Shown: positions 2,360-50,756, counted from the first letter of the stretch. The stretch is 64,000 nucleotides of DNA from Takakia lepidozioides (GCA_030704615.1 CM060732.1:68324001-68388000); one strand, 5' to 3'. Translations and numbers: made by a program. The notes: a model not told the origin generated them from the sequence alone.

Positions 2360-4740
2360 TAAAAGCCGCGAGCCAGTGGCCTTGCCCTCATGTCAACCAA
2401 GAGCCAGAGGATGAAAAGTCACAACCTGTGTAAAACCTGTGTTGATGAGCAACAAAAACCATGTGGGGATGGAAACAGTGCTCTTACGGACAAGAGACAC
2501 AAACCAAAAAAGATGTGAAACATGGCTGTGAGTGGGATTATACCAATAGGGACAAGAGACACAGATGCCAAGTGGAGGGGCTGAGAGAGAAATAGAGCTC
2601 TACTCAAAATTTAGGAACTACATCGGACCCTCCTCATGATGTGTGAGCTCTCTTTGCTGTCTACTATGTCCAGTATACACTGATTGGCGCCAACCCACCA
2701 ACATAGTAATATAGGCAGACGTAAGACTGAGAATTATACAACTCAAAACTTGTCCATGTGCCCCCAAAGCAAAAAACCTGAATGAAGAGGTAGAAAATAA
2801 TTCCTGGTAAGGTGAAATGTCACGTAGCGAACAAGATAACAGCTGCCTTGGGCAGTATTTCTCCTTGAGCAGATTTCTATAAGTTCACAAGACATAAACT
2901 TGTTTGGTGGCTGTGTGAGAAAACCATACTTTATCCCGCAATTAAGGTGTCTCTACTCAATCATCAAGCCAAATGCATTATGTCTTCATACAATTGACAG
3001 ATTGGCTCTGAGAAATTTGTAGGGCTGAAGTCCTGGTTAGAGGTCAAGTCTTGGTCAACCGGCCTCACTAAGGGCATTAATCTAGCCTATGAAAGTTACT
3101 TAATGTCAGCTTTATGAGACTCGAGTCTCTGCCTTTAAGATTTATTTAGCCAAAAGAATCCATCTTCCACTTACCACTTAACCCAACATGCAATTGAATT
3201 TCTATTGATAGAGGACCAAAGTGGAACAAATTCTTGAAGTTAGGATGTGATAAAAAACTTCCTCAGGTGAGTCCTCAAGGCGTATCAACACTTTGTCTGC
3301 CTGGACAACCTGCAGAATTTTCCCTTACGAGTTTAATTGAGTATGACACTATGAGCCTTTCATCTCTTGGATGTGTTCAGCCTTGGAGCTTCTGACCTTG
3401 GGAAGACCAATATCCTGCAGCATGACATTGAGACTGAAGGACCTCCTATCAAGCAATTTGCCTGTAGGGAGAGTGTATTGTGCAAGAGGAAATCAAAAAA
3501 ATGCTTGAAGCTGTGTGATTAAGCATTCCATCTCTCCTTGGGCCAGTCCCATAGTCCTTGTAAGAAAGAAGGGTGGAAGTACTCGCTTTTGTGTAGACTT
3601 CAGGCGTCTCAACACAGTCACTAAGAAGGATGCATATCCCCTCCCCAGGATCCATGAGACCCTTGACATGTTACATGGAGCCACTGTGTTTTCTTCCTTA
3701 GACTTGGCCTCTGGATTTTGGCAAGTGCCTCTAACTGAGGAAGCAAAAGAGAAAACCTCATTTGTTTGTAGGATGAACAAGTACCAGTATGAGACCATGC
3801 CTTTTGGTTTGTGCAATGCAACTTCTACCTTCCAGCGCTTGATGGATATTGTCCTTGGAAATCTGAGGTGGGAGTGTGCTTTGATATACATTGAAGATAT
3901 CTATTCAGCCACATTTGAAGCACATCTTCTTTCAAGACTTGCAACGTGTCTTCAACAGACTTAGAGCTGTAGGGCTAAAGGTTAAGCCTAAGAAATGTGA
4001 ATTGTGCATGCCTGAGCTTCACTTCTTGGGTCATGTCCTATCTAAAGAAGGTCTTAAGTCTAATCCTAAGAAGTTTTGCTCTGTCTGGGAGTTTCCCATT
4101 CCCAAGGACAAACACTGTGTTAAATCTTTCCTTGGTTTGGCTTCTTACTACCGGAGGTTCATCAAACATTTTTCCATGATTGCTTTTGCTTTGACCAAGC
4201 TTTTGGCTAAGGATGTTCGCTTTGAATGGGGCACTTTCCAACAAGTTGCCTTTGACAGGTTGAAGGTTGCTCTCACCGCTGCTCCAGTCTTTATGTTTCC
4301 CAATTTTCACTTGTCTTTTAAGATACAAACAAATGCTTCTGATGTTGCCATCTCTGCTATTTTTTGAGTTGCTTTATGGTAGACGTTGTGTCTCTCCTTT
4401 GCATCCTACTCTACTGATTTCCATTGTTTCTGAGCCTGCTGACTTGTCTGATTTTGTAGAGAGGGTGCATGCTAGGCACATGTTCTCGATTAATGAGGCT
4501 AAAGCTAACATTGTTCTTGCTCAAGCAATACAAGCTAGGAATTTTAACAAGCGGGTTAAATACTTAGATCACTTCCATGAGGGACAGACTGTGTGCCTAC
4601 GTCTTCAGGATGGGCAACATGCATGTAAATCTAAGCGGAAGATCGATGGTCCTTATTTATTGTACAAGTTGCTTTGTGGGAGACGTGCTTTGATTTTGCC
4701 ATAGGGACAATACGAAAGCACTGGTGTACGGGCTTCTGGA
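2360..4740 (+). mobile_element. Degenerate Ty3/gypsy retrotransposon internal fragment (RT, partial RNase H, integrase C-terminus)
   Basis: 3515-3964 SPWASPIVLVRKK..RFCVDFRRLN..YPLPRI..MPFGLCNA..YIEDI; 3891-4367 FLGLASYYRRFIKHFS..IQTNASD; then a jump to the integrase end (FELLYGR..GPY). Frameshifts present. The 5' boundary is approximate. Confidence 0.85.
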
Positions 4741-8224: not shown

Positions 8225-11200
8225 TCATGGCCCCTTTTGAAGGACTGTCTTTGACATCTGGATAGCCTCGGCAGCGTCAATGTCCTCTGGTGCAATAGGC
8301 TTCTGCGTTGAAATCCCACAGCTCAAGGGTGCCAAGCTTCCAGTTGTTACACTTTGGTTTGAACCATGGGCATCAAGCTGTGAGGCCGCAACAGGCGAAT
8401 CCCTGCTCACCAGAAAACTACCTTCCTGCCCAGCCAGCTCACTTTTCTCCTTTGAGTCCAACACCTGGCCATCCCTGAACATCTCTGGATTCTCTTTGAT
8501 CCGGCGATCGTACTCAAGGGCAGCTTCCTCAGCACTGTTGAACATGCCAAAATATGCATATTTTCTTCGAACCGGGTCGAAACAGGATGCCTGAAACCCG
8601 AGTGTCCTTTTATTAGCAAATAGCGGTAGTCATCATTGGTTTTTACTGGGGTCTAAGAACCGAGTGTCACTGAGTTGGCTTCTAATTCAAACAGATATCA
8701 CATCTAGAAGATGTCAAAAGGCTAGAATACTTTCTCTCTTGCTCCTCTAAATTACTACCTGAAACCGTTTGCCTCTTTGGTAGACCTTCAAAACCCGGTG
8801 GTGCTCTTTCTCAGTAAATGCGCCTGACACTCCTTCAGAGATATCCAATGTATCCTCCATTAGCTCCTCTGAGTCTGGCTCATCTCCAGAGCTAGCTACA
8901 TTCTCCTCATATAACCTGGAGGGCTCGGGAACGTTTGGATTCCTGCTAGCATTGGAATCTTCATGGTCAGAGTCTCGTGTTTCCAAGACCTGGCTGGCTT
9001 TCAAGAGCTCGCCTACCAAAGCATTGAATGCGGGCGTCTCTGGTCCCTCTCTCCGAGAACTTTCCTCTGTTCCTGTCTTGTGCTGTGATGGAGACACAGT
9101 CCCTTCCACTGAGCCCTTCAAAGAACTCTTTGCTTTATGCCGCTGGCTGTACATCCTTACCCTATACTCCTCCTTCTTCGCAGGCCCCAGCACAAAATGT
9201 TCAAGGGAGCATGAACTTTCCCCACCATGGCCATCATCTTCGCCATCCAGATCTTCCTTCCTTCCACTCTCCTCTCTTTCTGTGGGTAGAACCGGGGAGG
9301 AATCTAATTCACATGTGCTAGCAGTCATGGACGATCCCTCACCTTTGACGCATCCCCTATCCACTAGACCTGCTGCTTTGTCTCCACGAAAGTTCAACTT
9401 AGCAGCAGGGCCAAGGTTCTTGGAGGCCTCAAGGTCGTAGGCGCGAGCAGCTATTTCAGCAGTAGGAAAGTTCCCACAGTAATTGTGCTTTTTGTTTACA
9501 CTGTCCCAGAAAATGGCCTGGAAAGTGCTCCGATTTGCATACACCCCAATATACTTGGTTGACTTGCTAGACCACTTGCCCTCTAGCAAGGGGTCCACTG
9601 GGACAGATGTGGAAGCGGGACATTGTTCTTCTCTATTGTCATTTGTAACAAGTTTCGCAGGAGGATCCACAACAGCAGTGGTTGGAGTCTCCAAAGCAGG
9701 TGCTGATGATTTCAGTGTCTCAAGTTCAGCTGGCAGATTTAAAACTGCCGCCTCCCCAAATTGCCCAAAAGCCACCTAACCACAAATTGACATCCAAATC
9801 AAGGTTAGATACGATACCTGTACTGGATTTTCCTAGTATTGTGTTCAAGGATGCCAAAGGGGCTATGCAACCAAAAGAACAGATCTCCAAAACTAATTGC
9901 AAGTAGGCCAAAAGAATTCAAGAAGTATATTCTCATTCCAGGCTTGCCATAGATGAGGGCTTAACTCCTGCAGCTGTCCAATAAATGTATTGCAGCTGAG
10001 TAAACATGGAAAACCTATCCTCTTTGCTGTTTTCCATCATCTTACCCGAGGGAAGGATAACAAAGATGATCTCGCTGAATATTGGGACTGGATCATAGGT
10101 ATACCTGATCATGGGCTCGAGCAGCTTCCTCAGCAGTTAAAAACGTGCCCAGGTATGTGTGCTTTTTAGTTGCTGGATTATAGTAGATGGACTGAAACTT
10201 GTGACCATTGCAGTAAACCCCTCGAAAGTCAGCTCGCCGAGTGAAACCTCCTCGTCGGGCGGGCTTTTTTGCTGCTGCCCCATGTGCAGATGTCCCCTTT
10301 CCAGATCGTATGGAGCGGGCTGAGCCCTTCTGCCCACTGGGCAGATGCAAAGTCCCCTTCTGATTTAACTTACCTACCACAGGTGCCTCCTGACCAGAAT
10401 TAGCACGTGTGCCGAGTGGCTTTCTTCTGGGAGTGTCCCGTCTTTCAGGGACCATGCTCGATGTCTCTCCCTCATCTCCCAGCGAAGCTTCAGGGACAGA
10501 CTCCATAGCTGCAACTTCCTTGTCGCCAGCACGGCGTGCAGCATCAACTGAGCTAAAAACTCCCACAGACCGATAGTCCTTCAGCTTTACATCATAGCAC
10601 ATAGTTTCAAAGTCCCCAGCATCCGTAAGCTGAATCACAACCTTCTTCGTTATTGGTTTTGCTTTCACCTTCAGAGATTGAATCTCATCGGGGAAGTTGA
10701 GAGGAGCTGTGACACCACGTTTGCGGTAGGCCACCTCGTCATACGCATGAGCTGCTTCCTCAGGGGTATCATAGATGCCAATATAAATATGTTTCTTTGT
10801 TCGGGGAACATAAATTTTGGCCTTAAATCGCCCACTTGGGGTGGACTGTACTCCCATGTAAGTCTGTTGACTTTCCTTTCCAGAGGCTTTCTTTCTGGAT
10901 AAGCCTTTGGTTGGAGTCTTAACAGGTGACCTTGAATTACCTGCTTCCACATTCCAGGTGCCACTCTGCTTCTTTTCTGCCAATGGGGGCTTGATATTCG
11001 CCTGGACTTTCTTGTGTCCAGATGAAGGAGGATCCCCAGCTGTGCGAATTTTCTTCTGGCCCGCCAAAGGTGAATTGCCATCTGTTTCAATCTTTGTCTC
11101 TTTACGCATCCTTGATGACTCAACTGTGCTTGGAACATTTTTTAGAGCAGGACCTGGCAAGCTTTTCTCTGGGGTTATAGCAGGCAAACTGGATCCACTT

Positions 11201-14200
11201 CCGTGCTTGTCCATCATGGCCCGCCGCTTGGATGTTGTCTTGTAGACCCTGGCATAGCCTGACTCCACATAGCAATCTCCATGAACCCTGAAGAAATACT
11301 CAAGGGGGAGCATTCAAACGACCAATGAGATTGACAGTCAATCTCAGTTACTCCATCACCTAGTTACTTATATTCGTATATAAATACTATATCTGAGTCT
11401 TAATATGCTTCAAAGGCGGGAAATTCTTGCCATATTAGTACACCATCCCACTAGGCCAGAATTGGTGTGGGGACACATGACAAATATTGCACAAATAAGA
11501 GACCACAGCAGAAGAATGAAGTTTGATATCCCCTGCAGTGGAAGATGCTTTGACACATCAACACCATCAAGTAAAATTGTCCAATTGAGCAAGTTACCAA
11601 CAGTAGCAGTAAATCGCTGTTGACACTACATCTCTGACCAGCACAACCAGACCATACAGTACATGCCTGATACCCAGTTTGTTGAATGGCCCCAGATGTC
11701 TGACCGCACATCCTTTGCACCCTGAGAAACCTGGTAACATACCTATAGGGGAAATTGTTGCGGGAAGCCCGTTGCTGTGATTTGCCTCCATGTTCAGTTG
11801 CTTCGTGATCCTTCTCGAGCACTTGCGAGCTCACATCTGGCTCACTGGTTCCTGCTTTCCTTTTTAAGTTTGTTGCCCGACGCTTCTTCATTCTTGACGA
11901 ATCTGTATCCAACCCTATTGGTCCCTCGGATTTCCGCTTACAGCTGTGAGCACCTGGTGAATTTGGCGAGTTGCTGCCTAGTTTCTCTTGAGGAGTGGAG
12001 TTACTCTTTACGGCCTTCGGTGGAACAAGCTTCTTTTCACTAACTGCATAGCATACACCAGAGTTAAGTAGACTCCATAAGATCTGTACATCTCAATTGA
12101 TGTGAATTAGTGCATACTTCGGTGGAGAGCAACAACTTCACAATGCCATTTACTCAGCTCAACAACTGAATGGATGCCTTGTAGTGTTCATGGAAAGGTA
12201 GTCTTCATTCCATGGGTGACAACAGGTACTTATGTAACATCCAGTGATATTTTAATAAAAATGAGCAGCAGTAGTCAGCTGAAGAATCCTGCCACTAAAA
12301 TCAAAGGTATGGCTGGAGCCTTTAGGCATTTTCACAGGTGCCCACACTCAATCTGCTGTGTGTGGGTATGCCCAATAACTAGGCCCCAAAAGGGCCTAGG
12401 CTTTTGGCTCAGCCTCGAGACTTTCAAAGGAGTGCAGAGAGACCCATATACACACACAGGGGAAGGGCGACAGCAATGCATCAAATAAGCTACCTGCAGA
12501 TCCATCCACAACTTGGGTGGCCACAGGAATCTGAGTTGTCATGCCATCATTGATGTCAACCCCTTTCCTGGACTTCTCTCCAGCAACAAGGCTTTCTGGC
12601 TCGGCTGCTGAGGTAGAAACACAAGGCTTGCTCTTTTGGGACTTGCTTTTTTGGACCTTTTGTTCTGCTGAACAAGGGGAGATCTCTGTTTCGGGTACTT
12701 TCCGTTTCATGGCCTTTTTCAAGACTGGGTCTTCCTTTTTCAGGTCCAGATCCTCCTTACTCTGGGCGATCATGCGTTTCTTCTTATACCACTGTGCAAT
12801 ATCCTGGGCCTTGGGTTTCTTCTTGATGGTCTGCACCATCCCCTTTGCCTGCAGACATGCCAACAACCAAGGTTTTTTCAATCTATCAACAGACAAGATC
12901 CTGACAGCAGGATCTCTCTGTTTCTTGCACCTGCACACAGCTATGGTGCAATGAAGCCAGTGCTAATCAATGAATTTTGCCTAAAACCAAAAAAAAATGA
13001 AGAATTAATCACCTGAACATCCCACAAGTCCGGAAAGTTGAGCGTGGAAGCAGCACCCAAATCAATGGCCTTTTGATCACGTGCACGTGCAGCCTCCATC
13101 ATTGAATTGTACATGCCCACATAGACCTTCTTCCTTCTGCTCCGGTCATAGACACTGGCTTCAAACCGGCCTGACTGCGACTTGCGTACGCCCGTCAACC
13201 TGAAGTCCTTGTCTCCATTACCTAGTTCCAATAGAATTTTCTTTTCTTCTTCATTCAACTCTTCTCCAGCAAATGAGCCTGGAGCATTTCTCTGGCGCAA
13301 CTTTTCTAGGGGTCTTTTTCCTTCCAACATCTTCCCCTTCACTGAAGCCCCTGAATTCAGAAAGCAACCTGCCTCCTCTTTCACTAGAGATGTCTCCTCC
13401 TCTTTCACCCTCACCTGACTACTACCCTCAGCTTCCTTTTCCGTGTCCGTCAGGCAGTCTGATTGGCCATCAGGGTCAGTCACCCCTGTTGCTGTTACTA
13501 TCCTCTTGAACTTCTTCTTTTGCCGATTTCCACGAGGGACGGAGTTCCCACCACTGGACCCTGGCTGTGCACCATCCAACTGCAACCCTTCTTGGCTCAC
13601 CGCAAAGTTGCTCAGCAAAAGCAACCGGTCCGCTCCCTGTGTGTCTTGATATATCCTCTCTATGTTGGGCTTCCTCTCTAAGACATTCCCGCAGCCTGGT
13701 TCACCGCCCCTCCTCAAACTTTGCCCCTGAGATAATTCAGAGGGAGGGCGTTTCACTGACTCCCAAGGTAATGTGGTCTCCTCGTGATGTGCCTGGTGGG
13801 CAATTGGTGGAATCACACATGAGTTCTCGGGTCCACAGGCTACAGCATCCTCATTTCCAGTGCAGTCCGTACCTGCAGTCTCTTGGTTATCCACCAAATC
13901 TGCAAAGAGATCAGTTTTCATCTCGTTGCCCCTACTATTGACCTCGGTGCCCTTATTCTTGACCTTGAAAATATCCCCTTTATCTACACCACTACCATCC
14001 TCCTTCTTGACATTGAGGGATCGGCGCTTTTTGGAAGAAAGGGCCTCCAGGCAGGCACTGCTGGCACTCCCACCCTCATCATCGGGAAGACTCGATGGGG
14101 AGCCAAGAACAAATGGATACGAACTAAAATCAAATTCTGATCCCTGCACAAAGTTGGTCACTGCACTTGTCCCTCGGAAGATACGCGCAGCATCATCATA

Positions 14201-17200
14201 GGCCCGTGCTGCAGCCTCCTCTGTGGTAAAGGTGCCCAGCCACAAGCGCTTTCCCTCCGGTGTGCGAATCTCTGCCCCATACGCCCCCCAGGGCCGCTTT
14301 CGGACACCCACAAACCGTGAGAAGAATACGCGCCGGCCCTGATTGAAACAATTTTGTCATTGAAACTCGCAGTGTATCCCAAGCTGCAGAATTAAAGCCA
14401 TGATAACAGACCTTACAGGCAACAACCAGCAATTTCACAAGGAGAGGTGGTCCATACCTGCCCTCTACCCAAGGCTGAACTGTCTCTTGGTTGCTGCACC
14501 TTTGACTTGCGCTTGATGGCCAGTCCTGGAATCCCCCGGGGCTCTCGAGGCGCACAACGCACTCCCATGGTTGTCATATCTAGTGCTCCAAAATCAATTG
14601 TTGGAAGGATACTTAGCTGCTCATATGGTCGTTTGCACCCATTAGCCAAGGGGTAAACAAATTGTGGTGCAGTGCACATGAGGCCTACCCGGGTAAGATC
14701 CATGGGACCAATGTCAACCAGGCAAGGAAGACTTTGTAGCCCATGAACAAGCCTCTTGGTGTGGGCTCCAGTCACATATATCTTGCTCCCAATGGTTGGC
14801 TTGTGAAGCTTCTCATATTGCGGAACCCCACCGCGGTGAACATGTTTGACCCCAGCAGTCAGACCATTCTCCCCTATGGTGCCCTTGCCTCCCACACCTG
14901 GTCCAGCATATGGAAGAGTAATTCCATGGCTGCTTAGACGGCTACCTAGTTGTGCCCGGAAAAGTTCCAGCTCATCTGTGATTGAAATTATCTTTGGTGC
15001 TGAGCTGCTGCTCTTTCCATGCAGTGCATGGAAGGTCTGTTGCCGGAAAGCATCCACTGAGCGAGCAGGATCGGTACACCCAATAGACCGGCAACAGGGA
15101 AATTCCACACCCGCCAAGTGGCCTTCAGGGCAATTCCCGCTACTTGTTGCCAAATGCCCTGACCCTTGGCAGACACCTGTTTGGCACGTAGCTCTTGCAT
15201 CCTCTTTAAGACGTCCTGCTGCATTTCCTGTTTCAAGTTATACAAAATGGTTGACTAATATCGAAGCAAGTGTAAATTATGGTGCCTTCCGTTTGGAAGG
15301 TGGACACTTTCTAATAGCCATAACCAGGGCGATGCGGTTGCCCAAACCTCCCCCAAAAGGACTCAAAAGTCCCCAGGTATCCACACGTTAGGTAGGTGAC
15401 CAGTTGACCCAGCGAGCCCCCTTTTTATAGTTATAATGGGTGTCATCCAACATACACCTATGTGGCTTTCAACCCTTGATCACTTGTAAGGTGGCATTGT
15501 GTCCCTAACCACTGAGTTGGATACTTTTCAAGTTATAGATACTGATTACATCAACTGAATACCCCAAAACTCTCGATTCCATTGACTTTCAGTTACACAG
15601 GAGAGTAAAATATACTGAGATGTCTACACAGTTAATACCAAAAAATTACAACTCCATGTAGCATTTCTAATTGACCATGGGGAGAAATTTCATAGAAAAC
15701 CTTCTTTCTTCTGCCAAAAACCTCAGCCTTTGTGACCAAGGACAGCTAAATCACAATGAATTTTTGCAAGTATGAACATCTGGTTCCAAGGTGCACTCAA
15801 CACCAAGACAGCATCAAGCGAGAACACCCAGCCTACCTGCTGCTAAACATAAGACAGAATAGAAAAGAGGAAGGAGATTCATGGCATTATCCAGCTTGCA
15901 GTTTCCAAAACCCACCTGAGGTTCTCTTGGCTGCCTGTTTGGCATTAGTGATCGCACAACCCTCCCCCACTATACCTCCATAGCCAGCTTGTTTTGCGTC
16001 CTTGTGGAACAGACGCACAGGTGCGTACCCTACTCCTCCCTCAAGATAGCATGTCCCAAACTGGGGAAGCCTCTTCCCACTCAATGTCCTTGGTTCCTCT
16101 TTGGCACTCCCACCCTCTGGAAATTGCACAGACCATGCCGGCTGGTCGGCAATGACAGATGCCCAGATCTTTGGTGGATCAACAACCTCCATGTGGTGGG
16201 CCACCGTTGCTGCAAGAACAAGTATGGAGAATTCACCCATTGGAGGATTCTCCATAGCCTCCTGCTGTCTCAGGGTTTGTGGATTCAGAGTAAAGCCATT
16301 TGCATGCTTGTGCATTTGACAGAATCTGCAAACAGAGGAGATAAGAGCCATCCCCGTTTCAACTTGAGCAATCTTAGGAGAGCACAGCATTCATTCCTGC
16401 TACCATCCAACAAAGACAACCCTTTTTGTAGATGTATGACGTCATCCATCAATCCATGGCCCTGAAATTGTGCACCATATTAACATTCATAGAGAAAGGA
16501 GAGCAAGAAACGAACAAACAAACAGGCACAGGAGGGACAGCATACCTCGTATCATCAGCTTTGAGGGACACTGGGAAGCGGCAGCGATCACGGGTGGGCA
16601 CTTCAACAAATTCACACTGCTTGTATGGGGCAGCCAGATCTTCCAGAATGTGCCAGAGGCAGAACTGATACCCCTGAAGGCAATACTGGGAACAAGTTTG
16701 CCTTTTGGAATGGCACATTAGGCTGGAGTGTACACTCTGAGCTTTCCCATTGGATTGCAGGGACCTTGGTGGCACCAATGAAGAGGGGGCCCGTGGTGGA
16801 CCAGAGGGCAAATGCACCACATTGGAGGACACAGGTGCCAAACTCGAAGTTGAAATTGGTAGAAGCCTCTGACCAGAGGATGTAAGCGGTAGGCCAGAGT
16901 ATAGTGGCAAATTGGATGAAAGTGGAGACAGGCCAGGGGGTAAAGGTCGCATACCAGTTGACAACGGCAGGAGACCAGGTGACGGGGGCTGCAGGCCAGA
17001 GGATGAAGGCATTGAGCGGAAGGCTGCAGGTGATAGAACAGCCAATTGAGGTTTCAAGCCCACTCTATTGAAGTCATTTGTCTGCCTCTGCTCCACATCT
17101 GTGCAGAGAATCTTAGCACTGTGATCCCGGGTGTCAAAAATTTGGGATGCTGTGATTGGGCCTGCTGGACTATGGGCTGGTGAGATCGGGACTATGGGAA

Positions 17201-20200
17201 TTTGACCAGCTGAGATATGAGACCCTCCCCCATAGCGGACTCTGTGTCTCCCACTTCTTGCTCGTGACGGACCCAAGCAGTCAGCAATGACAGACGGAGA
17301 GCCAGAGCTTGGCAAGGAATCTGAAGGGGCCTGGACACCTGGGTTCTCTCCTCTACCAGCAGCCTTCACAGTACCACAAGAGTCAAACATGCCAGCCTTA
17401 GCAACACAAGGCTGCACCATTCCATTTTCAAGGTCGCCAGCCTTGTCATAATCACTTCCGTCACTTCGAGAAGGTTCTTCTAAGCCATTTTCCATAACAT
17501 GTGTCATCTTTGTGCCAGGTGTAACCTGCACACAAAAATCAACACCTCCATCACAACTGTTCTGAGCAGATTGTGTTACTGCAAGACAATCTCAAGAAAA
17601 ACCACTACTCGAAAGTTGATGTATTTCTAGCATGATTGTGGTGCAGAGTTGTAAGATCATCATAGGACACTTATAACATGGTACATTCATCCTCCAATAG
17701 ACCTCTTCACAACATCAAACGACATCCAAAGACCAAGTGCCTCATGCACGAGAGAGAGAATGTGCTCACAATACATTGTTTACTGTAGCCTTGTGGCCAT
17801 AGACCCCGTGCCCAGTTTGGGAGAGAATGTACTCATAAGACGTTGTTTGCCGTAGCCTTGTGGCCCAGTTTGGGAGAGATAGAGAGAGAGAGAGAATGTA
17901 CTCCTACGAAATTGTTAGTCCTAGCCTTGTGGCCATAGCTGTCGCGCCCCAGTTTGGGCGGAACAAAAGGGACCAGACACTACCTTTGTGAGGGGATCAC
18001 TCCAGTAGTATACAAATAATTAGTTCGGGGTTTCCAGATATCCTCTAGAAAGCCCTTCACACAACCATCAATCTGCTGTGCGTATACAGCCCAAAATTGA
18101 GATCCCAACCAGGCCAGGGCTTTAGGCTCAGCCTCAAGATTTTGAAAGTTGGTGAACAGAGGTGCCGAGACAATGTTCTTCATTGTCCTGAAGAGGGTCA
18201 CTCTCTGGTGAGAATATCCCGGACAGTGTATCAGAAAATGGATATTGTCTTCAGATTGCCCACACATGGGCAATTACAACCTCCTCTTCCTCTCTGCATC
18301 TGTTTATTGTTCAAAGGGAGGCTTCCCGCCCTGAGTTTAAATTTCAGTCTACTGTCTAGTCTTGTGGCCATAGAGAGAGAGAGAAATGAAATGAAATGGT
18401 GCTTTATAACGTCCGCGGAAAGCACGTAGAGCTTATGGGACAGAATGGAAGAAAACATGAGAGAGGAACAAATCCAGAAACCACAATTAATGTTCTAGCG
18501 ATTGTCTAAGGGTGAAGGCCTCGTGTAGGTAGGCTGCCAAGCATAGAGAAAGACAAATAAAGAGAAAGTAAATGTGCAAAGGCAGAAGTGTACCTTGCCC
18601 AAAACTGACCACAATGACAGGTAAATTGGAAAGACAAATATCACTTACCTTATTGCCTGGAAGTGACCAACTTTCTCCAGTCCAATCCACATGCAGCCGC
18701 ACTTCTGTCTCAGAGTTGACAGGCAAGGTGGACCCATCACTCACTGAAACCTGAGAACAAGTGCATTCACGTGCAAATGTTAAGTTACCTCGCACACACT
18801 CAATGTAACCCTTGAGCTGTAAGTGCAACACTGGTGAAGGACCTCGTGAACCCATCTTCAGGTCCTTTAAACTTTTATCAGAGTCTTTAAGAACAAAGAA
18901 AATTCTTCAGAGTATGGGAGAGGGGGGAGGACATTGACACATACCATCACACGCCTCGAGTCCAGAACCTCCATAATTTTCCCTGGCCTCCAACAACTAG
19001 CAACGTAGGCGTCAACAATATCACCTACTTGCCACTCCCCCTTGACAGCGGGGAACACCAAAGATCCCCCCTTTACCAGAGGGAACACAGAAGATCCACC
19101 ATCATCTCCCGCTATTTCAATATGCCTAGGAGGCCTTGGTCGAATCGAAGGCCCACTAGCCTTCTCCATCTTTGAGCCAGCACCTACAGTTATCCAGTGG
19201 TCGGCTGCACAGCCACAACCATATGCACCCTGAGGAATGCACTGCTGAAGAGTCTAAGCAATAGCCGGAGCACAGACAACGCCTCAGACAGAAATGAAAC
19301 CACATGGCTTCTCAGTATTTGCTGCGTCTACATTACTGAGCAAATCATTACTCCGACAACCAATGCTGAAGCTGGCCATATGTCAAAGATCCCTTGAACT
19401 AACAAGGCCAATCTGGGGTGTGGTGGCTGCTGGAAGCAGCACCAATGAAGTTTTGCTGCAGCTCCCAATAGCAAGCCTAGCTCGCCCTTGTCAGTGAGAG
19501 AAGCCTGAATTGTGAACAAGTCTTTTATCAGCACGAACATTGACATACTAAACGGAAATACCAAAACATGACTTCCCTCACATCAGGGACATGGTATGTC
19601 CACTGTGCTGAAGCAGACTGTTGCCAGGCCACAATATGCATGGTGGTTTGAGCTTCAGTCTGTGTATATGTCGTGAAAGATCCGAGTGTCCCGGCCTCTC
19701 TTTCTTTCCCTGTGGCTAGTAATATTATGCAGCAAGTAAGTTCATAGAGCTAGAAAAGAATGGAAACTGCAGCTACCCTCCATGATGTGCCAGAATGGAG
19801 TCAAGCAATCACCACAGATGATTTCCAGTATTATAGTTTATCATATGATCTGGCATATTGTGGTGCTATCACTCACTACTAATCTCTCCTCTGCCTCTAA
19901 GCCATAGTTGACATGACTCACGCTCATCTGGAAACTCCGGGTAATTAACAAAGTAGCGAAGCGCCCCATCTGTCTCTTTGTCTATCTTCAAAATCTGTAC
20001 CATTGCAAATCACAAGCAGACAACATCTGAAGGGTGGTCAACTCCAAACCCTGAATGAAAGTAAAACCTCTGAAAGCAGATGTCCACCTAGATTTTAACA
20101 AGGGGTCACTTTAAGGGACACTCAGCTTTGACTTTGTAGTAGAATGTGAATGCCAAACATAGAATTGACACTCAATGGCCTGTTAGCAAATTGTGAATGA

Positions 20201-20475
20201 GAACTACACAAAATTCCAGGCTGAGTCTTGGATACTATAGTGGGCTGACCACTCAATGTCAGCTCTTGGAGGGATAGCATCATCGGGAGTGTATGCTGTC
20301 AAGGGTATGTCAAAACCAATATTTGCAGGGGACGGTCAATGAGGACATGTCTCACGTATACCCATGTAGGAATGAAGCATACCTGTGCATTAACCCATGC
20401 ATCTGAGAATCGTTCACAGCTCTGACTGAGCTCCACCTTATCCATCACACGAAAGCGGGACTCAGGAGTTTCCAT
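8225..20475 (-). CDS. Multi-exon gene: 2x Agenet/Tudor-like + zf-C3Hc3H + 7x AP2-domain protein (about 2404 aa)
   Basis: Hand-spliced model, all introns GT..AG with matching phases. Exons: 20475-20383, 19994-19922, 19183-18945, 18750-18649, 17525-16546, 16325-15916, 15227-14458, 14338-13013, 12848-12494, 12043-11743, 11287-10105, 9775-8759, 8590-8225. Total 7215 nt, open frame to TGA at 8225. The N-terminus is uncertain because the frame is also open about 36 codons upstream of the ATG. Confidence 0.85.
8490..13198 (-). other. AP2 domains 2-7 (divergent)
   Basis: 13198-13031 ([26 protein letters not shown]); 10860-10689 ([24 protein letters not shown]); about 10650-10510 degenerate ([26 protein letters not shown]); 10227-10105 + 9775-9731 ([22 protein letters not shown]|VAF..LNLP); 9553-9389 ([24 protein letters not shown]); 8795-8759 + 8590-8490 (FQ|[28 protein letters not shown]). 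Confidence 0.85.
12348..12428 (-). mobile_element. Intronic fragment of the RTE-X-like LINE
   Basis: TCAATCTGCTGTGTGTG..GGCTTTTGGCTCAGCCTCGAGACTTTCAAAG is near-identical to 34078-34158. Confidence 0.8.
14150..14314 (-). other. AP2 domain 1 (canonical ERF-like)
   Basis: [55 protein letters not shown]. Confidence 0.95.
15280..15520 (-). mobile_element. Putative tRNA-derived SINE in an intron
   Basis: The minus strand begins CTCAGTGGTTAGG (A-box-like) ..TGCCACC..GTGATCAAGGGTTGAAAGCC (B-box-like). The 3' end is approximate. Confidence 0.45.
16310..16715 (-). other. C3HC3H zinc-finger domain (INO80D/KANSL2 type), split by an intron
   Basis: [57 protein letters not shown]|FCQMH shows the C-C-C..HIL.D..Y.QC..C..PV..C..H spacing. 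Confidence 0.8.
17750..18385 (-). mobile_element. Stack of truncated RTE-X-like LINE 3' ends in (GA)n
   Basis: GAGAATGT.CTC..TAGCCTTGTGGCC units at 17750-17821, 17822-17874 and 17875-18355, plus a stub at 18356-18378. The longest encodes [27 protein letters not shown], as at 33900-34360. Confidence 0.9.
18649..20475 (-). other. Tandem Agenet (plant Tudor-like) domains, coding exons 1-4
   Basis: [24 protein letters not shown]|[19 protein letters not shown] and [36 protein letters not shown] match the Agenet-pair pattern (VE..AW..A, IRP.PP, GD.VDA....W..G, R.H.DW.G..W). Confidence 0.8.
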
Positions 20476-30073: not shown

Positions 30074-30836
30074 AAACTTGGTGTTTTCGTATTTTGCTGA
30101 GGATGGAATGGTTGCATGAGTGCAAGCACTATGGCAATGCAGTTGGGTCCTCCGAGTGATCACTTTCTTTTTCCCTGTCTACCGTAGCTCTACGAGTAGT
30201 ACAGTCTTATGCACTTGCAGGTCTGATGGTGATCACCTCTCACTGTGCTGCAGGCGGGAAGCGCAGCAGCAGCTGGTGGCTGCGGACAGGGCCAATCTCC
30301 CGCAGCGATCCTGTTGCCGCGTGCTCCTCCTACAGGCGGGCAGCAGCCGGCATCTCCTCGTAGAAGTTGCACCGCACGCTGGTTATGCAGCTTTGAGGTA
30401 AGGCCATCTAGCCCTTACGTCACAAATCTCGAGATTCTCTACATTTCAGCCTGCACACTTCACCCTCCATACTCTCAATTGCTTCCACAACAACGATAAT
30501 TTTCTTCCAGGGCCTATGTATGCAGGGCTGCCCTTCAACTATGGCTGTGGGATGTTGTGCTAAAAGACTGCAACTGTGGAACCAAAGCCTCATGTGAACG
30601 CTCACTAAAATTGAGAAGAGTCTAGCGATTCATTGATAATTAGTCCTCCCTTGCAAATGAGGGCTAGCTTGGGTTGTTTCTGGCGAAGCCTGCGCCATAC
30701 GGAATGGCCAATTCCACATGTACCTGGGTCCTGGGCTCCCATTCAGCCTGCTTAGTCGGCCTCTTTGTCAAACTGATGAGAAACTTTTCCTGTTTCTGCA
30801 GAATTCTGTTAAAAGGTGCACACCTTCCTGTTCATC

Positions 30837-33385
30837 ATGGCGACGCAGGCATCTAAGCTCCTTGAAGCCCATGTGGTTGCCTTCCCCTTTCCATCGGCAG
30901 GCCACCTTGTCCCTTTCGTGCAGTTCTCGAAGATCTTGGCTGGCTATGGCATCACTGTCACCTTTGTGACCACGACTACACATCTCTCTCGTACAAAACG
31001 AGACCTGATTGATGACACCAGCTTTGTGTTCAGCCACAATGTGCATTTGGTTGCCCTTGAGCTTCCTACTGGATATGAAAATCTAAACAGCTCCAGCGTA
31101 GAAGACTTGAAAGAGGCGTCAAAATCACCCGTCATGAAAGCATCATTCGAAGAACTCATAAGATCACTGATGGACTCCCCCCCGGCTACCCTCATAGGTC
31201 CTCCTGTATGCATCATCTCCGACATGTTCTTGGGTTGGACTCAGGTAGGCGCCTATGATTGCATCACAAGAGAGCTTTGAGTCAGCGTTGTATTTGCAGT
31301 TTCTGGTGTCAAGCACATGTAATTCTACAACAAGAGAATTTGCGTACATGCCACTCGGTAGTATGAATTCAAGCTCGAGTCGTATCACATTGGGAAGATG
31401 GACACTTAGTGTGATCATCTGAGGACTTCCATTCACTAGCCTGAGAAAGATACACAAGATTTTTGCTATGTGATCTTTAGGTCTACCACATTTGGGAGGA
31501 TGGTGCAATGCTCTATTAAGTGTTATGCCTGCCCACACTCTTTCTCTCAGCTGTCATGTTAATAAGCTAGCTTGATCAAGATATAGATACGATTGTATGC
31601 AATCTACTACCTTAGCTTGAGTAACACTGCAAACAAGAGGTCACTATCCAGTCCCAATATGCACCTCACAAGTGACACAACTTGAATGGCAGGTTACCGC
31701 TACCAAGTATCGGATCCCAAGATATTGTTTGTTTTCATCATCAACACCTTTGCTTTCCCTGTGGTACCACTTCCGCTTTTTCAGTGCACAAGGTCGGATT
31801 CCTGTGAAGTCAGCTGAACAGGCTCCATTTCTCCTTCCAGAGTTTCCTCCCCTCAAAGCTCACGAGCTCCCTCCAACATTGCAGAAAAAGTCAGGCGCTG
31901 ACTTTTTTGTGGAGAACGCGGAGAGTTTATGGGAAGCTGTGGGGGTGTTTGTGAATAGTGTTTACGAAATGGAATCTTCCGTAATTGAAGGCCTTCGAGA
32001 TGTACTTCAAAGTAGGTTGAAGATAACTCAGGTCAGTGTCTTTACATTTAACACAGAGGTATTACAGGGCAGAGTTGGAATGGACTTAAACTAGGATACC
32101 CGCACAGCTGACATCTGCAAGATTCAAATCTTGAAGGGCTGAATTCACCTGGGACCATGTATATAGCCACATGTTGTGGCTGCAGGCCCTACAGAATTCT
32201 ACCTTTCCCAGATCTCAACTCTTAAGCTTTACATCAACACAGAAGGAGCTACTCACAGAGAGAGTGATTCGAGAGGTCACAGACTACCTATGGCTTTTTT
32301 CTCCAGGAGAGAGATGTGAGAGAGAGAAGATGATAGGTGAGACAGGGCATCTGTCACCCCTCATGAAGAACCTGCATGGTGCAAGAAGGAAAGAGAAAAA
32401 GTTCAAAATTATAGAAAATGCAATGGGAACTGATGGGTGCACGACTAATCTTAGCTTAGTTGAGTGGATGACAGTTTCTCAAGTGGTGCAATAGGTGTGC
32501 CAGGCGATTTTAGTATTTGAATTAGAAGGGTATCTTGTTGCATAGTTTCATGGCTGCTGGAAACAAAGCTGAGTACTTCGATTTCAGACAAGATGGTAGT
32601 GGCAGCTCTACAGCTGATACCATATTATTTATATGCAATTGACCTGTTGCTTGCAGGTGCCTAGCATCTTAATGGTGGGACCCACACTATTAGAGGGAAA
32701 CAAGGAGAACATGTTCAACAACCCATCACAAGCGAGTTCAGACAAGAATGAGTGCATAGACTGGTTGAACACACAGCCAACCTCCTCTGTTCTGTATGTC
32801 TCCTTTGGAAGCATAGCTACTTTCTCTGCCACACAGCTTCATGAACTAGCTCTCGGGCTTGAGACGAGTGGGCAAAACTTTCTGTGGATCCTAAGAGCTC
32901 TACAAGGTAGTGAAGGTGACATCTCTGCCTTCCTCCCTGAAGGTTTCATGGAGAGGACTAAAAAGCAGGGATTAGTGTTCTCTGCATGGGCGCCACAGTT
33001 GCAGATCCTTGCCCATCCCGCGGTTTGGGGTTTCCTGAGCCACTGTGGGTGGAACTCCATAGTGGAGAGTATTTGCATGGCCGTGCCCATGATAGCTTGG
33101 TCGATTCAATCTGAGCAACACATGAACAAAATACTTGTTGTAGACGTACTAAAAGTTGCTGTTCGGGTCCAGGGATCTGATGATGGGTTGGTTGGCAAGG
33201 AGGAGGTAGAGAGGGTCGTGAGGCTTCTGATGGAAGAGGAGAGGGGAGAGATGTTAAGGAAAAATGTGAAGGATCTAAGCATTACAGTACGAAATGCTGT
33301 AGGGCCCGGTGGTTCTTCCAGGAAGACTCTGGATTCTTTTGTAGAAAAGCTCCATTTTTGGCAGTCTCAGTCATCTTCATCGTGA
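30837..33385 (+). CDS. Family-1 UDP-glycosyltransferase (UGT), 3 coding exons, 491 aa
   Basis: join(30837-31244, 31693-32031, 32657-33385), phase-0 GT-AG introns. HVVAFPFPSAGHLVPF (catalytic His), CIISDMF (Asp), WLNTQPTSSVLYVSFGS, PSPG box WAPQLQILAHPAVWGFLSHCGWNSIVESICMAVPMIAWSIQSEQ, GGSS motif. Confidence 0.95.
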
Positions 33386-33884
33386 GTGATGTGCCTTGAC
33401 TGAGGGTGTCTGTTTGAGCTTGTTTTTTTGAGAGGCTGGGAGATTTTATTGGAAGCTGTGGAAGGAGCTTTGCTTTGATCTTCCGAGTGCTTGCAGCTCT
33501 GCTTTCAGGAGACTGACTCCTAAAACACTGTTCACTCAGAGGGTTCCTGAATTCCGTTGAGTCTGGTGGGCTACCTTGCCATCTTTACCCCACATTTGAT
33601 ATTTGTGTGTCCGAGTGGGTACTTCTGAGCCACACCTAATCTGTTGTATAGAAGATATCTCATCTTCTTCAGGTGTGTGTTCATGCTATGCTCTAGATAC
33701 CACCATTAGCAAGTGGTATACCATTCTCCTTTCTGACTTCACAGACCATGTATGTAGTTGCAGATAGTGGAAGGCACAAAACTCTAGTTCCACTTTGGCA
33801 TTAGAAAGGATACTTCAAAATAGACTATCAGATTTCTCCTAAGAGAAATATAAGAAAGATGTATGTGCTGCTTTCAAAAGTATG

Positions 33885-36800
33885 AGAGACAGATTGTACT
33901 CATAAGACGTTGTTTGCCGTAGCCTTGTGGCCATTGACCCCGCGCCCAGTTTGAGCGGGAACAAAAGGGACAGAACCTACCTCTGTCAGGAGCTGACGTT
34001 GGTAGTAAGACTTACCTCCATATATAGAATTAATCCGGGTTTTCCAGATATCCTCTAGAAATCCCTTCACACAAGCATCAATCTGCTGTGTGTGATTTGC
34101 CCAAAAACTAGGCCTCGGGAGGGCCTGGGCTTTTGGCTCAGCCTCGAGACTTTCAAAGTTGGTAAACAGGGGTACAGGCACAATACCCTTAATAGATTTG
34201 AAGAGAGCGTCTCTTTGGTGAGAGAACCCCGGACAGTGTATCAGAAAATGAATACTGTCTTCAGATTGCCCACACAACGGGCAATTGCACTCTCCCTTTC
34301 CTCTCTGCTTCTGTTTGCTGTTCAAAGGTAGGCTTCCTGCCCTGAGTTTAAATTTCAGTCTAGTGCCGAGAGTGGGTAGACCCTTGAGGTCATCCAAGAT
34401 GTCCTCCCCCATGTCACAGACTGGAAACAAGTTCAGGGAAGTTTTCTGCCTAACTTCATTTTCATCAGACGATCTCATGGCAGCAGACATGGCTGAGGAC
34501 ACTACAGCCTCTAAGTCAGATTTATCCAGCAGGGTCAAGACTTGCGGATCCAGGTCCAGGTCCTTGAGGATCTCTTCTACTCTCTTCTGCCAGGACTTAG
34601 CCTGTTTGACAGGGCGGTCCTGTTTCCAAGATATAGAGTCGATTAACTTAGGATATCTGGTGTTGGGCATATGTTGCAGCTGACCCCACCATCCGACCTT
34701 GAATTCATCTCGTCGGGAGCTTAAGGACGGAATGCCAAACTCACCCCGAACAGCCACATTGGCTGTTTTGGAGCATGCTGACATACACTCCTTAAGCACC
34801 CCCACTTGAATGGATTCTAGAGACTTAGCCTGGTTGGAGTTATCAACCCATATAGCAGATCCGTACTCCAAGGCAGGTCTAATAACGCGACAAAGCATGG
34901 TTTTCTTAACCTCAGAGTTGACCCCTCTGCAGTGGAAAAGTTTAGTGAGCCCCAGAGCTTTGCCCTTGCCAGTTTGAACAACTTTCTGGATATGTGCATC
35001 CCAATTACAATTGGAGGAGAACTCAACGCCCAGGTAAGTGTAGGAAGGGAGGACCGGGATCTCTTGGCTACCCCACTGCCACTTAAGATCACTTCCTCCC
35101 TCTCCTCTGTCGTTGAATGCTACCACTGCACATTTGCTGACATTAGCCTCTAGCCCCCAAAGATCAAAGTATCTCTTCGCGCAATCAATCAACTCCTGGA
35201 GATTGGTTGGAGTCTCCCTATGCCTGCGAAGTCATCCGCAAACATAAGGGCTGGTATGGTGGTATCACCCACCCTTAACCCAAATCCCTCACTTTCCACA
35301 TCCTCGAGGAGTTGATTGATGAAAACATTGAAGAGCAGAGGGGAGAGAGTACATCCTTGAGCTACACCTTGGTCTATGTCAAAGAAGTTGGACTTCTGTC
35401 CGTTAACAGTGACACAGCTTTTGGTGTGAGCATACAAGTTGTGGACAACTCTCCACATCTTTCCCTTGATCCCACAAGACCAGAGGCGGAACCATAGGCC
35501 ATCTCTCCACACTGTGTCATAAGCCTTTTTGACATCCAGGAAAAAGACATAAGTGGGTTTCCCTTCTTTTTTCCTTCCTTGGATAATCTGGCTTAGAGTG
35601 AAGATACGATCCACACAGCCCCTGTTTCGCCGAAAGCCAGCTTGGCCTTCGTGGAAACAACCTCTAGACTCCAGATCAACCTCGAGACGAGTACTTATAA
35701 CTCTGCAGAATGTCTTGCCAACAGCATTGAGGAGCGTGATGCCACGGTAGTTCCCCAGTTCTTCTCTGTCACCCTTCTTGTATAGATTGACAATGACCCC
35801 CTGTCGCCAGCGAAAGGGGATCATTTCAGTCTTCCAGATAAGGTTAAAGAGGAGAACTAGGGCCTCTATCATGGGATCGCCACCGTGCTTGATAAGCTCG
35901 TTGACAATACCATCAGGTCCACCAGCTTTATATCCATTTAAATGTTCAATTGCTTCCACAATCTCAGAAGAACTAATGGGAGCATTATAAGCCATTGAAA
36001 TATACTCCAGTTCATCAGGGCTGTTTTAAATCATAGGAACAGTTTTTCCAACTGTGTCCCTCCATTCAGCAGAAGACCCCTCACTGTTAGACCTAGAAGT
36101 TCTGCCAAGGATACTGTAGTGAGTTTCAAAGGTTTTGACAATGTCAACCGATGAAGTCACCACTGCAACTTTAGTAGTCTTCAGCGCTTGTACTTGCTGA
36201 CCGTTTTTCGGTTTGTACAAACGTTGAAGGGCCAATTTCTTGTCATTACCACCATGGTCGTTTGAGTTTATTTCACTGTATAACTTGTCCCAGTATAATT
36301 TCTTCTGAGACCTAACAAGCTGATTGATATCTTTACGGAGCTAGTAGTACCTCTCCCACAATTCTCTATTGGTTTCCAAATTGCAGCACTCTTTATAGAG
36401 GGCTCGTCTCTCAGCTATCTTGAGTTTAATCTCATTAGTCCACCAATTAACTGCTCTACCGCAGACAATTAGTTTCCTCCCAATGATCTTGTTAGCCATG
36501 GAGGAAACGAAACTCTCCCAAGAGTCCACTGCTCTTTCCACTTCATTTCTTGCGTTAACAGAGCGTGACTGAAGTTCTTGGAGCGATTGGACAAAATGAG
36601 GGAGAGCCTCTTGCAAGGCCTGGACGTACTCAGCCTTGACCTCCTCATTGTGGAATTTTTCTATGCGCCACTTCCGAATCGAACGTTTCACAAATCTCTT
36701 GGTGGTGGGAAAACACCTTTTGATCTCAGTCCAAACCAGGAAGTGGTCAGAGGTACCAATATCAGTTCTGCCGATCAACACATTGGCACATTGGGGGAAC

Positions 36801-37605
36801 AAAATTTTGTCCATTATGATATAGTCCACAATGGAACGTTCCCGAGTTTGGGATTTCTCACGAGTCCACTGCACTTGGTCACCACTTGTCCTGTTATTCA
36901 AGGTAAACTTGTGAGCTGAATTCTAATGGCAGACGGTTAATTAACTGTCTAGAAGTTCTTCTAGACAGTTAATTAACCGTCTGCCATTAGAATTCAGCTC
37001 GTCCTCACCAAAAGGTCCAATGATATCGTCCTGATGGATCCCTTTGCCCACCCGGGCATTGAAGTCCCCCAATAGTACTACCTGACCTTTGGCAAGGAAC
37101 GAAGCACAGTCTAGCTTTACATCTTCGAAGGCCTTGTCTGCGTCAGCACTAAGGGTCCCCTCTGTGGGCATGTAAACACAACCAACAAAGAGGTCCTTTG
37201 TATTCATGCCGCCCTTCAAATTCAGTTTTAGCCAGATACTGTGCTCGTACCTCAAACCCTTGTTGATAATTTCACAATTGTCAAACAAGAAATCACGAAC
37301 AAAGAATCCGACCCCTTTTTTATCGCCTTTGGCAGAGGCTGCCTTTAGAGTACACATCTTACCTGCCCATTTATAACCAATGACATCTCCAACCGGTTTA
37401 TCCGACGTTTCCCATGTTTCTTGCCCAACACAGATATGAATATCATTAGTCCGAAGAACTTGTCCCACTTCAAGTTGTTTCTTTTGGTTGGTCAACCCTG
37501 AGAAGTTGAAAGTGGCCAGTCGCAAGCCAGCCCTTTGCGTGTGAATTGTTTGTCGTCTAGGTAGCTTGTGATTGCTCCTGGACGGCCAACCGTTCTGCAA
37601 AGGGG
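33885..37605 (-). mobile_element. RTE-X-like LINE (APE endonuclease + RT + C-terminal CCHC), disrupted; 5' part displaced to about 49300-49699
   Basis: APE: LATFNFSG, GQETW, GVGFFV, CVYMP, LLGDFNARVG, IVDYI, SDHFLV. RT: KAGGPDG, NYRGITLL, QAGFR, FLDVKKAYDTVWRDGLW, GVAQGCTLSPLLF, MFADD, YTYLGV, LEYGSAIW. C-terminus CPLCGQSEDSIHFLIHC. Several stops and frameshifts. The clade assignment is an inference. Confidence 0.9.
36913..37000. repeat. Perfect 43-bp inverted repeat with a 2-nt spacer
   Basis: 36913-36955 is the exact reverse complement of 36958-37000. Confidence 0.95.
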
Positions 37606-38675
37606 TGTCGAGCGGCTTTTACTCACCCATCCTTTCGCTATCCGAGGTGGAAACTCCAAGATAGAAGAGTTGGATATCTCTAAGCACTCAGCCCCGCTCA
37701 GTACAATCAGTCATGACCTGCAGCTAGTGAATCACGGTTGTGCTTCCCCTTTGTATTCCTTCTTGCTTTCATGTTAACAATTTATCTTATCTGGTACTGA
37801 AGCATCAGTTTGCTTCAGTATCTTCTTAGTTCCAGTTAATCATGCATTCATTTCACAGCTTCACTCATGTCTCTCTACACAATGTGCTTGTATCAAATAA
37901 GTTTCAGATTACGATTTATCAGGTACTAGGCCAATGTCAAGTGACTCTAATCCACCCTACAGTATCACTACAGTTCTGCATGAAGTAAAGCATCTACTGT
38001 TCATCTCTCTTCCTACTCCGTGCTCTCGTTCTTGTTCTTTGCCTGATCTCTTCTCCTCCATGACCATCAAGCGTTCCCCCGTGAAGTGTCCTTCTTTTCG
38101 TTGCCGTTCTCCTTATCTGCCCCCCAAGCTGTTCTAACCACCTAGCTAATTAACCGTTATCCCCGAAGTATCACGTTCTTACTGCAGATGTCGTTCCCTC
38201 ACAGTCATTCTCTGCCATTGATAACTGTTCCCCATGTACTGTGACAGGCTGTGTCAAGCTGTGCCGAGCTGTGACTGGCTGTGTCGGCTGTGTTGGCTGT
38301 GATGGCTGTGATGGCTGTGACTGGCTGTGTCGGGCTGTGTTGGCTGTGTCGGGCTGTGTTGGCTGTGACGGGCTGTGCGAACCTGTGTCAGGCTGTGTCG
38401 GCTGTGATTGGTTGTGACGGACTGTATCGGCTGTGCGAAGCTGTGTCAGGCTGTGTCGGCTGTGATTGGTTGTGACGGACTGTGTCGGGCTGTATCGAGC
38501 TGTGTCAGGCTGTGTCGGCTGTGATTGGCTGTGACGGACTGTGTCGGGCTGTGTAACCCCCCCTAAAGTGCGCTGCTGTCACCCCTAAGGCTCCTGTTGG
38601 TCTCAGTCTGCGCAAAAATTAAGGGTACCCCACAGAACCCGTAAAAGCGTCTAAGTCCCAAGCAGCCTTCTAACA
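37606..38675 (-). mobile_element. 3' LTR of non-chromovirus Ty3/gypsy element A
   Basis: TG..CA termini; homologous (inverted) to 49700-50745; preceded on the minus strand by the polypurine tract GAGAGGGGGAGGGGTAAA (38693-38676). Confidence 0.92.
38238..38553. repeat. CTGTG-based tandem repeat inside the LTR (also at 49826-50113)
   Basis: GGCTGTGTCG/GGCTGTGAC units of about 9-10 bp. Confidence 0.9.
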
Positions 38676-50745: not shown

Positions 50746-50756
50746 TTTGGCGACAC

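What the first reader, a model, noticed from the sequence alone, without database searches (positions are those of the whole stretch)
8225..20475. Giant Agenet x2 + INO80D/KANSL2-type zinc finger + 7xAP2 protein: a candidate chromatin reader fused to a polydactyl AP2 DNA-binding array
Seen: the ORF-track fragments splice with canonical, phase-consistent introns into one frame of about 2404 aa carrying all three domain types. Established: plant AP2/ERF proteins normally have 1-2 AP2 domains; Agenet domains are Royal-family readers often binding methylated histones; zf-C3Hc3H occurs in INO80D and KANSL2, subunits of remodeller and acetyltransferase complexes. Inference: one polypeptide could read a histone mark, bind an extended or multipartite DNA site, and recruit INO80/NSL-like machinery. 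I do not recognise this architecture from angiosperms. It is the best candidate here for an undescribed system.
Basis: partly seen in the sequence, partly recalled or inferred. Interest (0 to 1): 0.85.

Follow-up and report, generated by a model that had tools for sequence, protein, structure and literature searches.

The report
Moss seven-AP2 transcription factor, A3Bz1 family
This is a real, very large moss gene-regulator gene from a family that was described in 2019 but has no functional study I could find; this copy has lost one DNA-binding domain, and its supposed histone-mark reader lacks the residues that normally bind the mark.

Summary
The gene is real. Thirteen minus-strand exons (20475-8225) and 12 GT-AG introns give one 2411-aa frame: tandem Agenet pair, zf-C3Hc3H, seven AP2 domains. 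Eleven intron positions recur in moss orthologues; intron 12 does not.

It is not undescribed. It is the orthologue of Marchantia MpAP2B3-2/MpREM3 (Mapoly0093s0032) and Taxus TcA3Bz1, a clade published in 2019 (PMC6781369). I found no functional study. Members occur in liverworts, mosses, a lycophyte, ferns and conifers, with a permuted relative in Chlorokybus; I found none in angiosperms.

This copy lost the two B3 exons cleanly and has the most AP2 repeats seen.

The Agenet pair has 0 of 3 H3K9me2 cage residues. Only AP2-1 keeps the GCC-box contacts, and the repeats are distinct ancient types on long linkers. The finger resembles the first KANSL2/INO80D finger, which was dispensable for NSL function.

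Best reading: a scaffold transcription factor anchored on DNA by AP2-1. The scan's notes show no earlier report of this architecture.

The parts
20383..20475 (-). Exon 1: start codon and first part of Agenet 1
   Evidence: same junction in L002 and Marchantia
19922..19994 (-). Exon 2: Agenet 1
18945..19204 (-). Exon 3: end of Agenet 1, Pro-rich linker, first part of Agenet 2 (cage positions V and R)
18649..18750 (-). Exon 4: end of Agenet 2; perfect-consensus phase-0 donor
17526..18648 (-). Intron 4: where relatives carry two phase-0 B3 exons; no B3 trace here
17750..18354 (-). LINE 3' fragment inside intron 4, about 77% identical to 33884-34365
16546..17525 (-). Exon 5: disordered linker, internal Met187, most of the zf-C3Hc3H finger (from 16715)
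15916..16325 (-). Exon 6: last Cys/His of the finger and a conserved hydrophobic block (about 16267-16169)
14458..15227 (-). Exon 7: conserved unnamed block before AP2-1 (about 14739-14458)
13013..14338 (-). Exon 8: AP2-1 (14314-14141, canonical ERF contacts) and AP2-2 (13198-13025)
12494..12848 (-). Exon 9: basic linker with a short conserved helix-like motif
11743..12043 (-). Exon 10: basic linker
10105..11287 (-). Exon 11: conserved motif (11286-11197), AP2-3 (10860-10684), AP2-4 (10641-10474), first part of AP2-5 (from 10227)
8759..9775 (-). Exon 12: end of AP2-5 (to 9725), AP2-6 (9553-9380), start of AP2-7 (from 8791)
8225..8590 (-). Exon 13: rest of AP2-7 (to 8462) and stop codon; the junction has no orthologue support

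Best explanation
A single intact gene of an early-branching moss encodes the A3Bz1 / MpAP2B3-2 orthologue, a 2411-aa scaffold transcription factor with long polar, probably disordered, linkers. Shown by sequence: AP2-1 is almost invariant across land plants and keeps the ERF base-contact residues. Inferred: it anchors the protein on a GCC-box-like site. Shown: AP2-2 to AP2-6 are separate conserved types without those contacts. Inferred: they and AP2-7 add weaker or different DNA contacts, or protein contacts, on flexible tethers, rather than reading one continuous long site. Shown: the finger is intact, of the first KANSL2/INO80D type, and followed by a conserved hydrophobic block. Inferred: this is the protein-docking module that links the factor to chromatin-modifying partners. 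Shown: the Agenet pair keeps its fold and is under purifying selection but lacks the methyl-lysine cage. Inferred: it binds a protein or unmethylated peptide. Agenet and B3 are accessory and were lost in steps in mosses. The core kept by all members examined is finger plus AP2-1.
For: Orthologues with the same domain order in liverworts, mosses, a lycophyte, ferns and conifers. Shared intron positions. An intron-free 1987-aa ORF with Agenet, B3, finger and AP2s on 6.5-kb contigs from two runs, evidently spliced RNA of a relative that groups with conifers. AP2 repeats group by position in a tree. dN against L002 is 0.02 for AP2-1, 0.05-0.2 for AP2-2 to AP2-6, 0.21 for the finger, 0.42-0.62 for the Agenets and 0.65-0.79 for linkers, with dS above 1.1 or saturated. 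AP2-1 aligns to AtERF1 with R150, R152, R170 and W172 kept. KANSL2 showed no DNA binding and its second finger mediates protein contact.
Against: No binding, localisation or mutant data were found for any member. No RNA from this species. The KANSL2 finger of this type was dispensable in the one test reported, so its partner is unknown. Agenet 1 dN is close to linker levels. The single-sequence fold of AP2-3/4 failed (pLDDT 42).
Confidence: 0.5

Rival explanations
1. One reading: the Agenet pair reads a methylated histone, the seven AP2s read one extended site, and the finger recruits INO80 or NSL machinery.
For: The orthologue's Agenet pair has the fold of the H3K9me2 readers ADCP1/AGDP1/AGDP3. 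The finger's nearest non-family relatives are KANSL2-like proteins. The invariant neighbouring Trp and other conserved aromatics could form a different pocket.
Against: Cage residues are 0/3 here and in L002, 1/3 in liverworts and 2/3 in conifers, where Arg or Lys sits at the Trp position. In ADCP1, mutating two of these abolishes binding. Agenets are absent from Physcomitrium, Ceratodon and ferns. The AP2 repeats are far apart. The finger is not the type shown to bind NSL.
Confidence: 0.13
2. In this species the working product is a shorter protein starting at Met187 in exon 5, as in Physcomitrium and Ceratodon. The Agenet exons are a minor isoform, a separate small gene, or on the way out.
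For: Physcomitrium and Ceratodon proteins begin with a similar sequence and have no Agenet or B3. Intron 4 has lost the B3 exons and taken a LINE fragment.
Against: All four Agenet exons are open, with conserved splice sites and dN below dS. The exon 4 donor is a perfect consensus. The exon 5 acceptor is the same one used after the B3 exon in L008. Both are phase 0.
Confidence: 0.12
3. The protein is a stable subunit of a plant remodeller or acetyltransferase complex and gives it sequence targeting through its own AP2 domains, much as YY1 does for INO80 (analogy from my own knowledge).
For: The finger scores 82 bits against a first-finger profile and 34 against a second-finger profile. Finger plus AP2-1 is the core kept from Chlorokybus to conifers. 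The Marchantia gene is detected in 414 gemma cells by single-cell RNA-seq.
Against: Only one finger is shared. No other KANSL2 or INO80D region matched. Not found in angiosperms, which keep INO80 (own knowledge). The profiles were built from hits picked by likeness to this finger.
Confidence: 0.2
4. The AP2-7 exon is not spliced on, so the protein has six AP2s.
For: L002 ends without a seventh AP2. Intron 12 was not found in any orthologue.
Against: Splicing rebuilds a full AP2 across the junction (E 1.6e-14), and liverworts have a terminal AP2 that resembles it, with weak tree support.
Confidence: 0.1

Closest known systems
A3Bz1 clade of AP2/EREBP: Taxus TcA3Bz1, Ginkgo Gb_05581, Marchantia MARPO_0093s0032 = Mp5g11100 (MpAP2B3-2/MpREM3), Physcomitrium Pp3c11_13860 and Pp3c7_17700 (PMC6781369; name in PMC11132968 supplement)
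   Same: Orthologous. Same order: Agenet pair, finger, several AP2s. Shared intron positions and conserved unnamed blocks. Nested among mosses in the tree.
   Different: No B3 domain while the Agenets are kept, a combination seen in no other land-plant member examined. Seven AP2s, against six in Marchantia, Riccia and L002, five in Physcomitrium and Ceratodon, four in Diphasiastrum, three in conifers and one or two in ferns. The paper counted three.
ADCP1/AGDP1 and AGDP3 tandem Agenet H3K9me2 readers (PMC6318295, PMC6208443)
   Same: Tandem Agenet fold with a Pro-rich linker.
   Different: Cage Y/W/F becomes V/R/V, and the H3R2-binding N/D becomes A/S. One pair, not three.
KANSL2 and INO80D zf-C3Hc3H fingers (PMC10456878)
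   Same: All eight Cys/His positions and the motifs of the first double finger are present.
   Different: One finger unit, not two. It matches the first unit, whereas the second carries NSL binding. The rest of the protein is unrelated.
ERF-type AP2 factors (AtERF1, ERF96) and RAV/TEM1
   Same: AP2-1 keeps the GCC-box contact residues.
   Different: Six further non-canonical AP2s. In relatives the B3 lies before the AP2s, the reverse of RAV.

Membership tests
A3Bz1 / MpAP2B3-2 clade | Three or more AP2 domains | tested here: met
   Seven repeats
A3Bz1 / MpAP2B3-2 clade | zf-C3Hc3H N-terminal to the AP2 repeats | tested here: met
   Pfam above cut-off; order in model
A3Bz1 / MpAP2B3-2 clade | AP2 repeats orthologous by position | tested here: met
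   Repeats 1, 2, 4 and 5+6 form supported groups; 3 has its nearest rows among third repeats but no single supported clade; 7 is weak
A3Bz1 / MpAP2B3-2 clade | Orthology to MARPO_0093s0032 and the Physcomitrium members by sequence, tree and introns | tested here: met
A3Bz1 / MpAP2B3-2 clade | B3 domain (in Taxus, Ginkgo and Marchantia; optional in the clade, since the paper includes B3-less moss members) | tested here: not met
   Family B3 profile finds nothing in the window, best 5 bits against 92-140 in relatives' loci
ADCP1/AGDP tandem Agenet H3K9me2 readers | Tandem Agenet fold | tested here: met
   Marchantia orthologue model matches 7yta, 6ie6, 5zwz; window scores 123 bits to the family profile
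ADCP1/AGDP tandem Agenet H3K9me2 readers | Aromatic cage Y/W/F in the second Agenet | tested here: not met
   V/R/V
ADCP1/AGDP tandem Agenet H3K9me2 readers | Binding to H3K9me2 peptide | not testable with these tools
   needs ITC or a peptide array
KANSL2 / INO80D | zf-C3Hc3H finger with all ligands | tested here: met
KANSL2 / INO80D | Two finger units and homology outside the finger | tested here: not met
   One unit; matches limited to the finger
KANSL2 / INO80D | Subunit of NSL or INO80 complex | not testable with these tools
   needs IP-MS
ERF subfamily | GCC-box contact residues | tested here: met
   AP2-1 only
ERF subfamily | Single AP2 domain | tested here: not met
   Seven

The most novel reading that the evidence does not exclude
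The family is an ancient streptophyte DNA-targeting subunit of an INO80- or NSL-like complex. It docks through a first-type KANSL2/INO80D finger, is aimed by an ERF-type AP2 plus up to six non-canonical AP2s with new specificities, uses a cage-less Agenet pair in an undescribed binding mode, and was lost in flowering plants.
Probability: 0.2. Interest if true: 0.75.

Novelty: new member of a known kind. Interest (0 to 1): 0.38.

Why it matters
The family is conserved from liverworts to conifers, has a permuted relative in Chlorokybus, and was not found in flowering plants. I found one descriptive paper on it and no functional study. Only one Marchantia polymorpha cluster turned up in the searches (Mp5g11100), so it is directly testable. 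This locus shows the family has up to seven distinct AP2 types rather than three, and it records a step in domain loss within mosses (B3 lost, Agenets kept). If the finger does tie a sequence-specific AP2 factor to a remodeller or acetyltransferase, that would be a targeting route not known from Arabidopsis. As it stands, it is one more member of a described, untested clade.

Tried and rejected
I did not resend, trim or shift it, so read laying could not be used. As a precaution I sent no further letters of that stretch to search tools; the job had gone out in the same batch. The joined protein was used only in local scripts and was never sent to a search tool.

My first exon guess was out of frame and was corrected. 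One search mislabelled the Y129-equivalent column by one residue; one search is the correct table. The L002 model had a frame slip, so its first two AP2s are missing from that tree; it was fixed.

A hidden or decayed B3 in the window was not found by tblastn, profile, tblastx or blastn. No solved structure matches the finger. The single-sequence fold of AP2-3/4 was unusable. The Atlas gave no hit for the conserved motif before AP2-3. A search with the Chlorokybus protein found no further algal member with the finger. A GCC-box count in L007 was at chance level and uninformative.

Rejected: recent tandem duplication of one AP2 type; chance juxtaposition of separate genes; pseudogene.

Full report
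Observation. The feature lies on the minus strand. Joining 13 exons (20475-20383, 19994-19922, 19204-18945, 18750-18649, 17525-16546, 16325-15916, 15227-14458, 14338-13013, 12848-12494, 12043-11743, 11287-10105, 9775-8759, 8590-8225) through 12 GT-AG introns gives 2411 aa with no internal stop. This was done in a local script only; the joined sequence was not sent to any search tool. Pfam finds zf-C3Hc3H and AP2 above cut-off and a weak Agenet signal. A profile built without the window finds seven AP2 repeats at residues 905, 1277, 1700, 1773, 1911, 2026 and 2280, all far above shuffled controls.

Is it one gene? I have no transcript from this species. The case rests on orthologues. A second moss (L002) has junctions 1-11 at the same positions and phases. 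The annotated Ceratodon gene shares junctions 5-11. Marchantia shares 1-3, 5 and 8, with 4 three residues away. A 1987-aa intron-free ORF with Agenet, B3, finger and AP2s sits on 6.5-kb contigs from two runs, evidently spliced RNA of a relative that groups with conifers. Only junction 12 has no such support.

What it is. A search with the finger exon returned long proteins from Physcomitrium, Marchantia, Diphasiastrum, Ceratopteris, Adiantum and Chlorokybus. Further searches added Riccia, Calypogeia, Ceratodon, Cryptomeria and Taxus. The angiosperm hits had AP2 without the finger. This is the A3Bz1 clade of Zhang et al. 2019 (PMC6781369), who named the Marchantia gene MARPO_0093s0032 with its Agenet, B3, finger and three AP2s and reported absence from angiosperms. 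That gene is Mp5g11100, MpAP2B3-2/MpREM3. It is detected in 414 gemma cells, while its promoter reporter gave no signal (PMC11132968 supplement). I found no functional study. On conserved blocks the window gene is sister to all other mosses in the tree (96/99). An earlier scan note suggests the genome is Takakia; that fits the tree, but I did not test the species.

What differs in this copy. B3 is missing. In moss locus L008 the B3 is carried by two exons bounded by phase-0 introns, and the acceptor after them is the one the window uses at 17525. The loss is therefore a clean removal of two exons. The intron now holds a LINE 3' fragment about 77% identical to a copy at 33884-34365; whether it caused the loss is unknown. 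Physcomitrium and Ceratodon lack both Agenet and B3 and begin with a sequence resembling the one at window Met187. The window's AP2 count of seven is the highest among the members examined. AP2-6 is shared with L002 and groups with AP2-5. AP2-7 resembles the last liverwort repeat, with weak support. The Chlorokybus protein has finger, one AP2 and two Agenets in a different order.

Testing the proposed mechanism: Agenet. The Marchantia pair folds like ADCP1/AGDP. ADCP1 binds H3K9me2 with Y301, W306 and F323, and a Y/W double mutant does not bind (PMC6318295). The equivalent residues, read from the alignment, are V/R/V in the window, I/N/L in L002, I/W/L in Marchantia, and Y/R/F or Y/K/F in conifers. 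Canonical H3K9me2 reading is therefore unlikely. The exons are still constrained, with dN 0.42-0.62 against dS 1.25-1.33.

Testing the proposed mechanism: AP2. Repeat 1 is 98% identical to that of L002 and keeps R150, R152, R170 and W172 of AtERF1 (residues from PMC3602543). It also keeps W154, E160 and R162 (their role is from my own knowledge). Repeats 2-7 lack nearly all of these yet are conserved by position. Gaps between repeats are about 315, 365, 15, 80, 55 and 195 residues of polar linker. Only repeats 3 and 4 are a tight pair, so this is not a finger-like array.

Testing the proposed mechanism: finger. All ligands are present. It matches the first finger unit better than the second in 36 of 36 two-unit proteins, and scores 82 against 34 bits on unit-specific profiles. 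Those proteins were picked by likeness to this finger, which biases the comparison. In KANSL2 the second unit is needed for NSL binding, the first was dispensable, and no DNA binding was seen (PMC10456878). A protein-contact role is plausible; recruitment of INO80 or NSL is not shown.

Mechanism, committed at about 0.5. A scaffold transcription factor. AP2-1 anchors it on GCC-like DNA. The other AP2s add secondary DNA or protein contacts on flexible tethers. The finger and the block after it dock chromatin partners. The Agenet pair is an accessory, cage-less binding module. Gene structure, domain content, residue states and selection are shown; all binding steps are inferred.

Verdict. Observation confirmed, interpretation partly supported. 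It is a new member, with a new domain combination, of a described but functionally untested clade. Interest 0.38.

Noticed in passing
L004:7993-8327: The annotated 2171-aa Marchantia isoform splices out a stretch encoding an intact AP2-2 (72.6 bits); a 2255-aa annotation keeps it. The Calypogeia model also lacks AP2-2. Possible alternative splicing that switches one AP2 in or out.
   Followed up: partly
P0026 (Chlorokybus), residues 457-1010: Finger, AP2 and two Agenets in a permuted order, with no B3. The three-domain association may predate land plants.
   Followed up: partly
window 11286-11197: A motif of about 30 residues before AP2-3 is conserved from liverworts to ferns and conifers. It has no Pfam or Atlas match.
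   Followed up: partly
window 14739-14458 and 16267-16169: Two further conserved unnamed blocks, one just before AP2-1 and one hydrophobic stretch just after the finger.
   Followed up: partly
window 33884-37618 (-): A broken LINE with RT- and endonuclease-like ORFs. Its 3' end recurs in intron 4 and, as a short piece, in intron 9 (about 12348-12429).
   Followed up: partly
window 30813-33382 (+): ORF pieces that look like a plant UDP-glycosyltransferase gene, judged by eye from the translation.
   Followed up: no
window 55697-58231 (-): Ty3/gypsy chromovirus pol with integrase and a C-terminal chromodomain. Other LTR-element pieces lie near 3500-4400, 43400-44450 and 50600-53200.
   Followed up: no
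window about 38000-38600, 42800-43300, 49900-50150, 61050-61600: Arrays of short degenerate tandem units near the retroelements.
   Followed up: no
fern proteins P0008, P0012, P0017, P0019: Ferns keep two or more paralogues, reduced to finger plus AP2-1, with or without B3 and AP2-5, and with no Agenet.
   Followed up: partly
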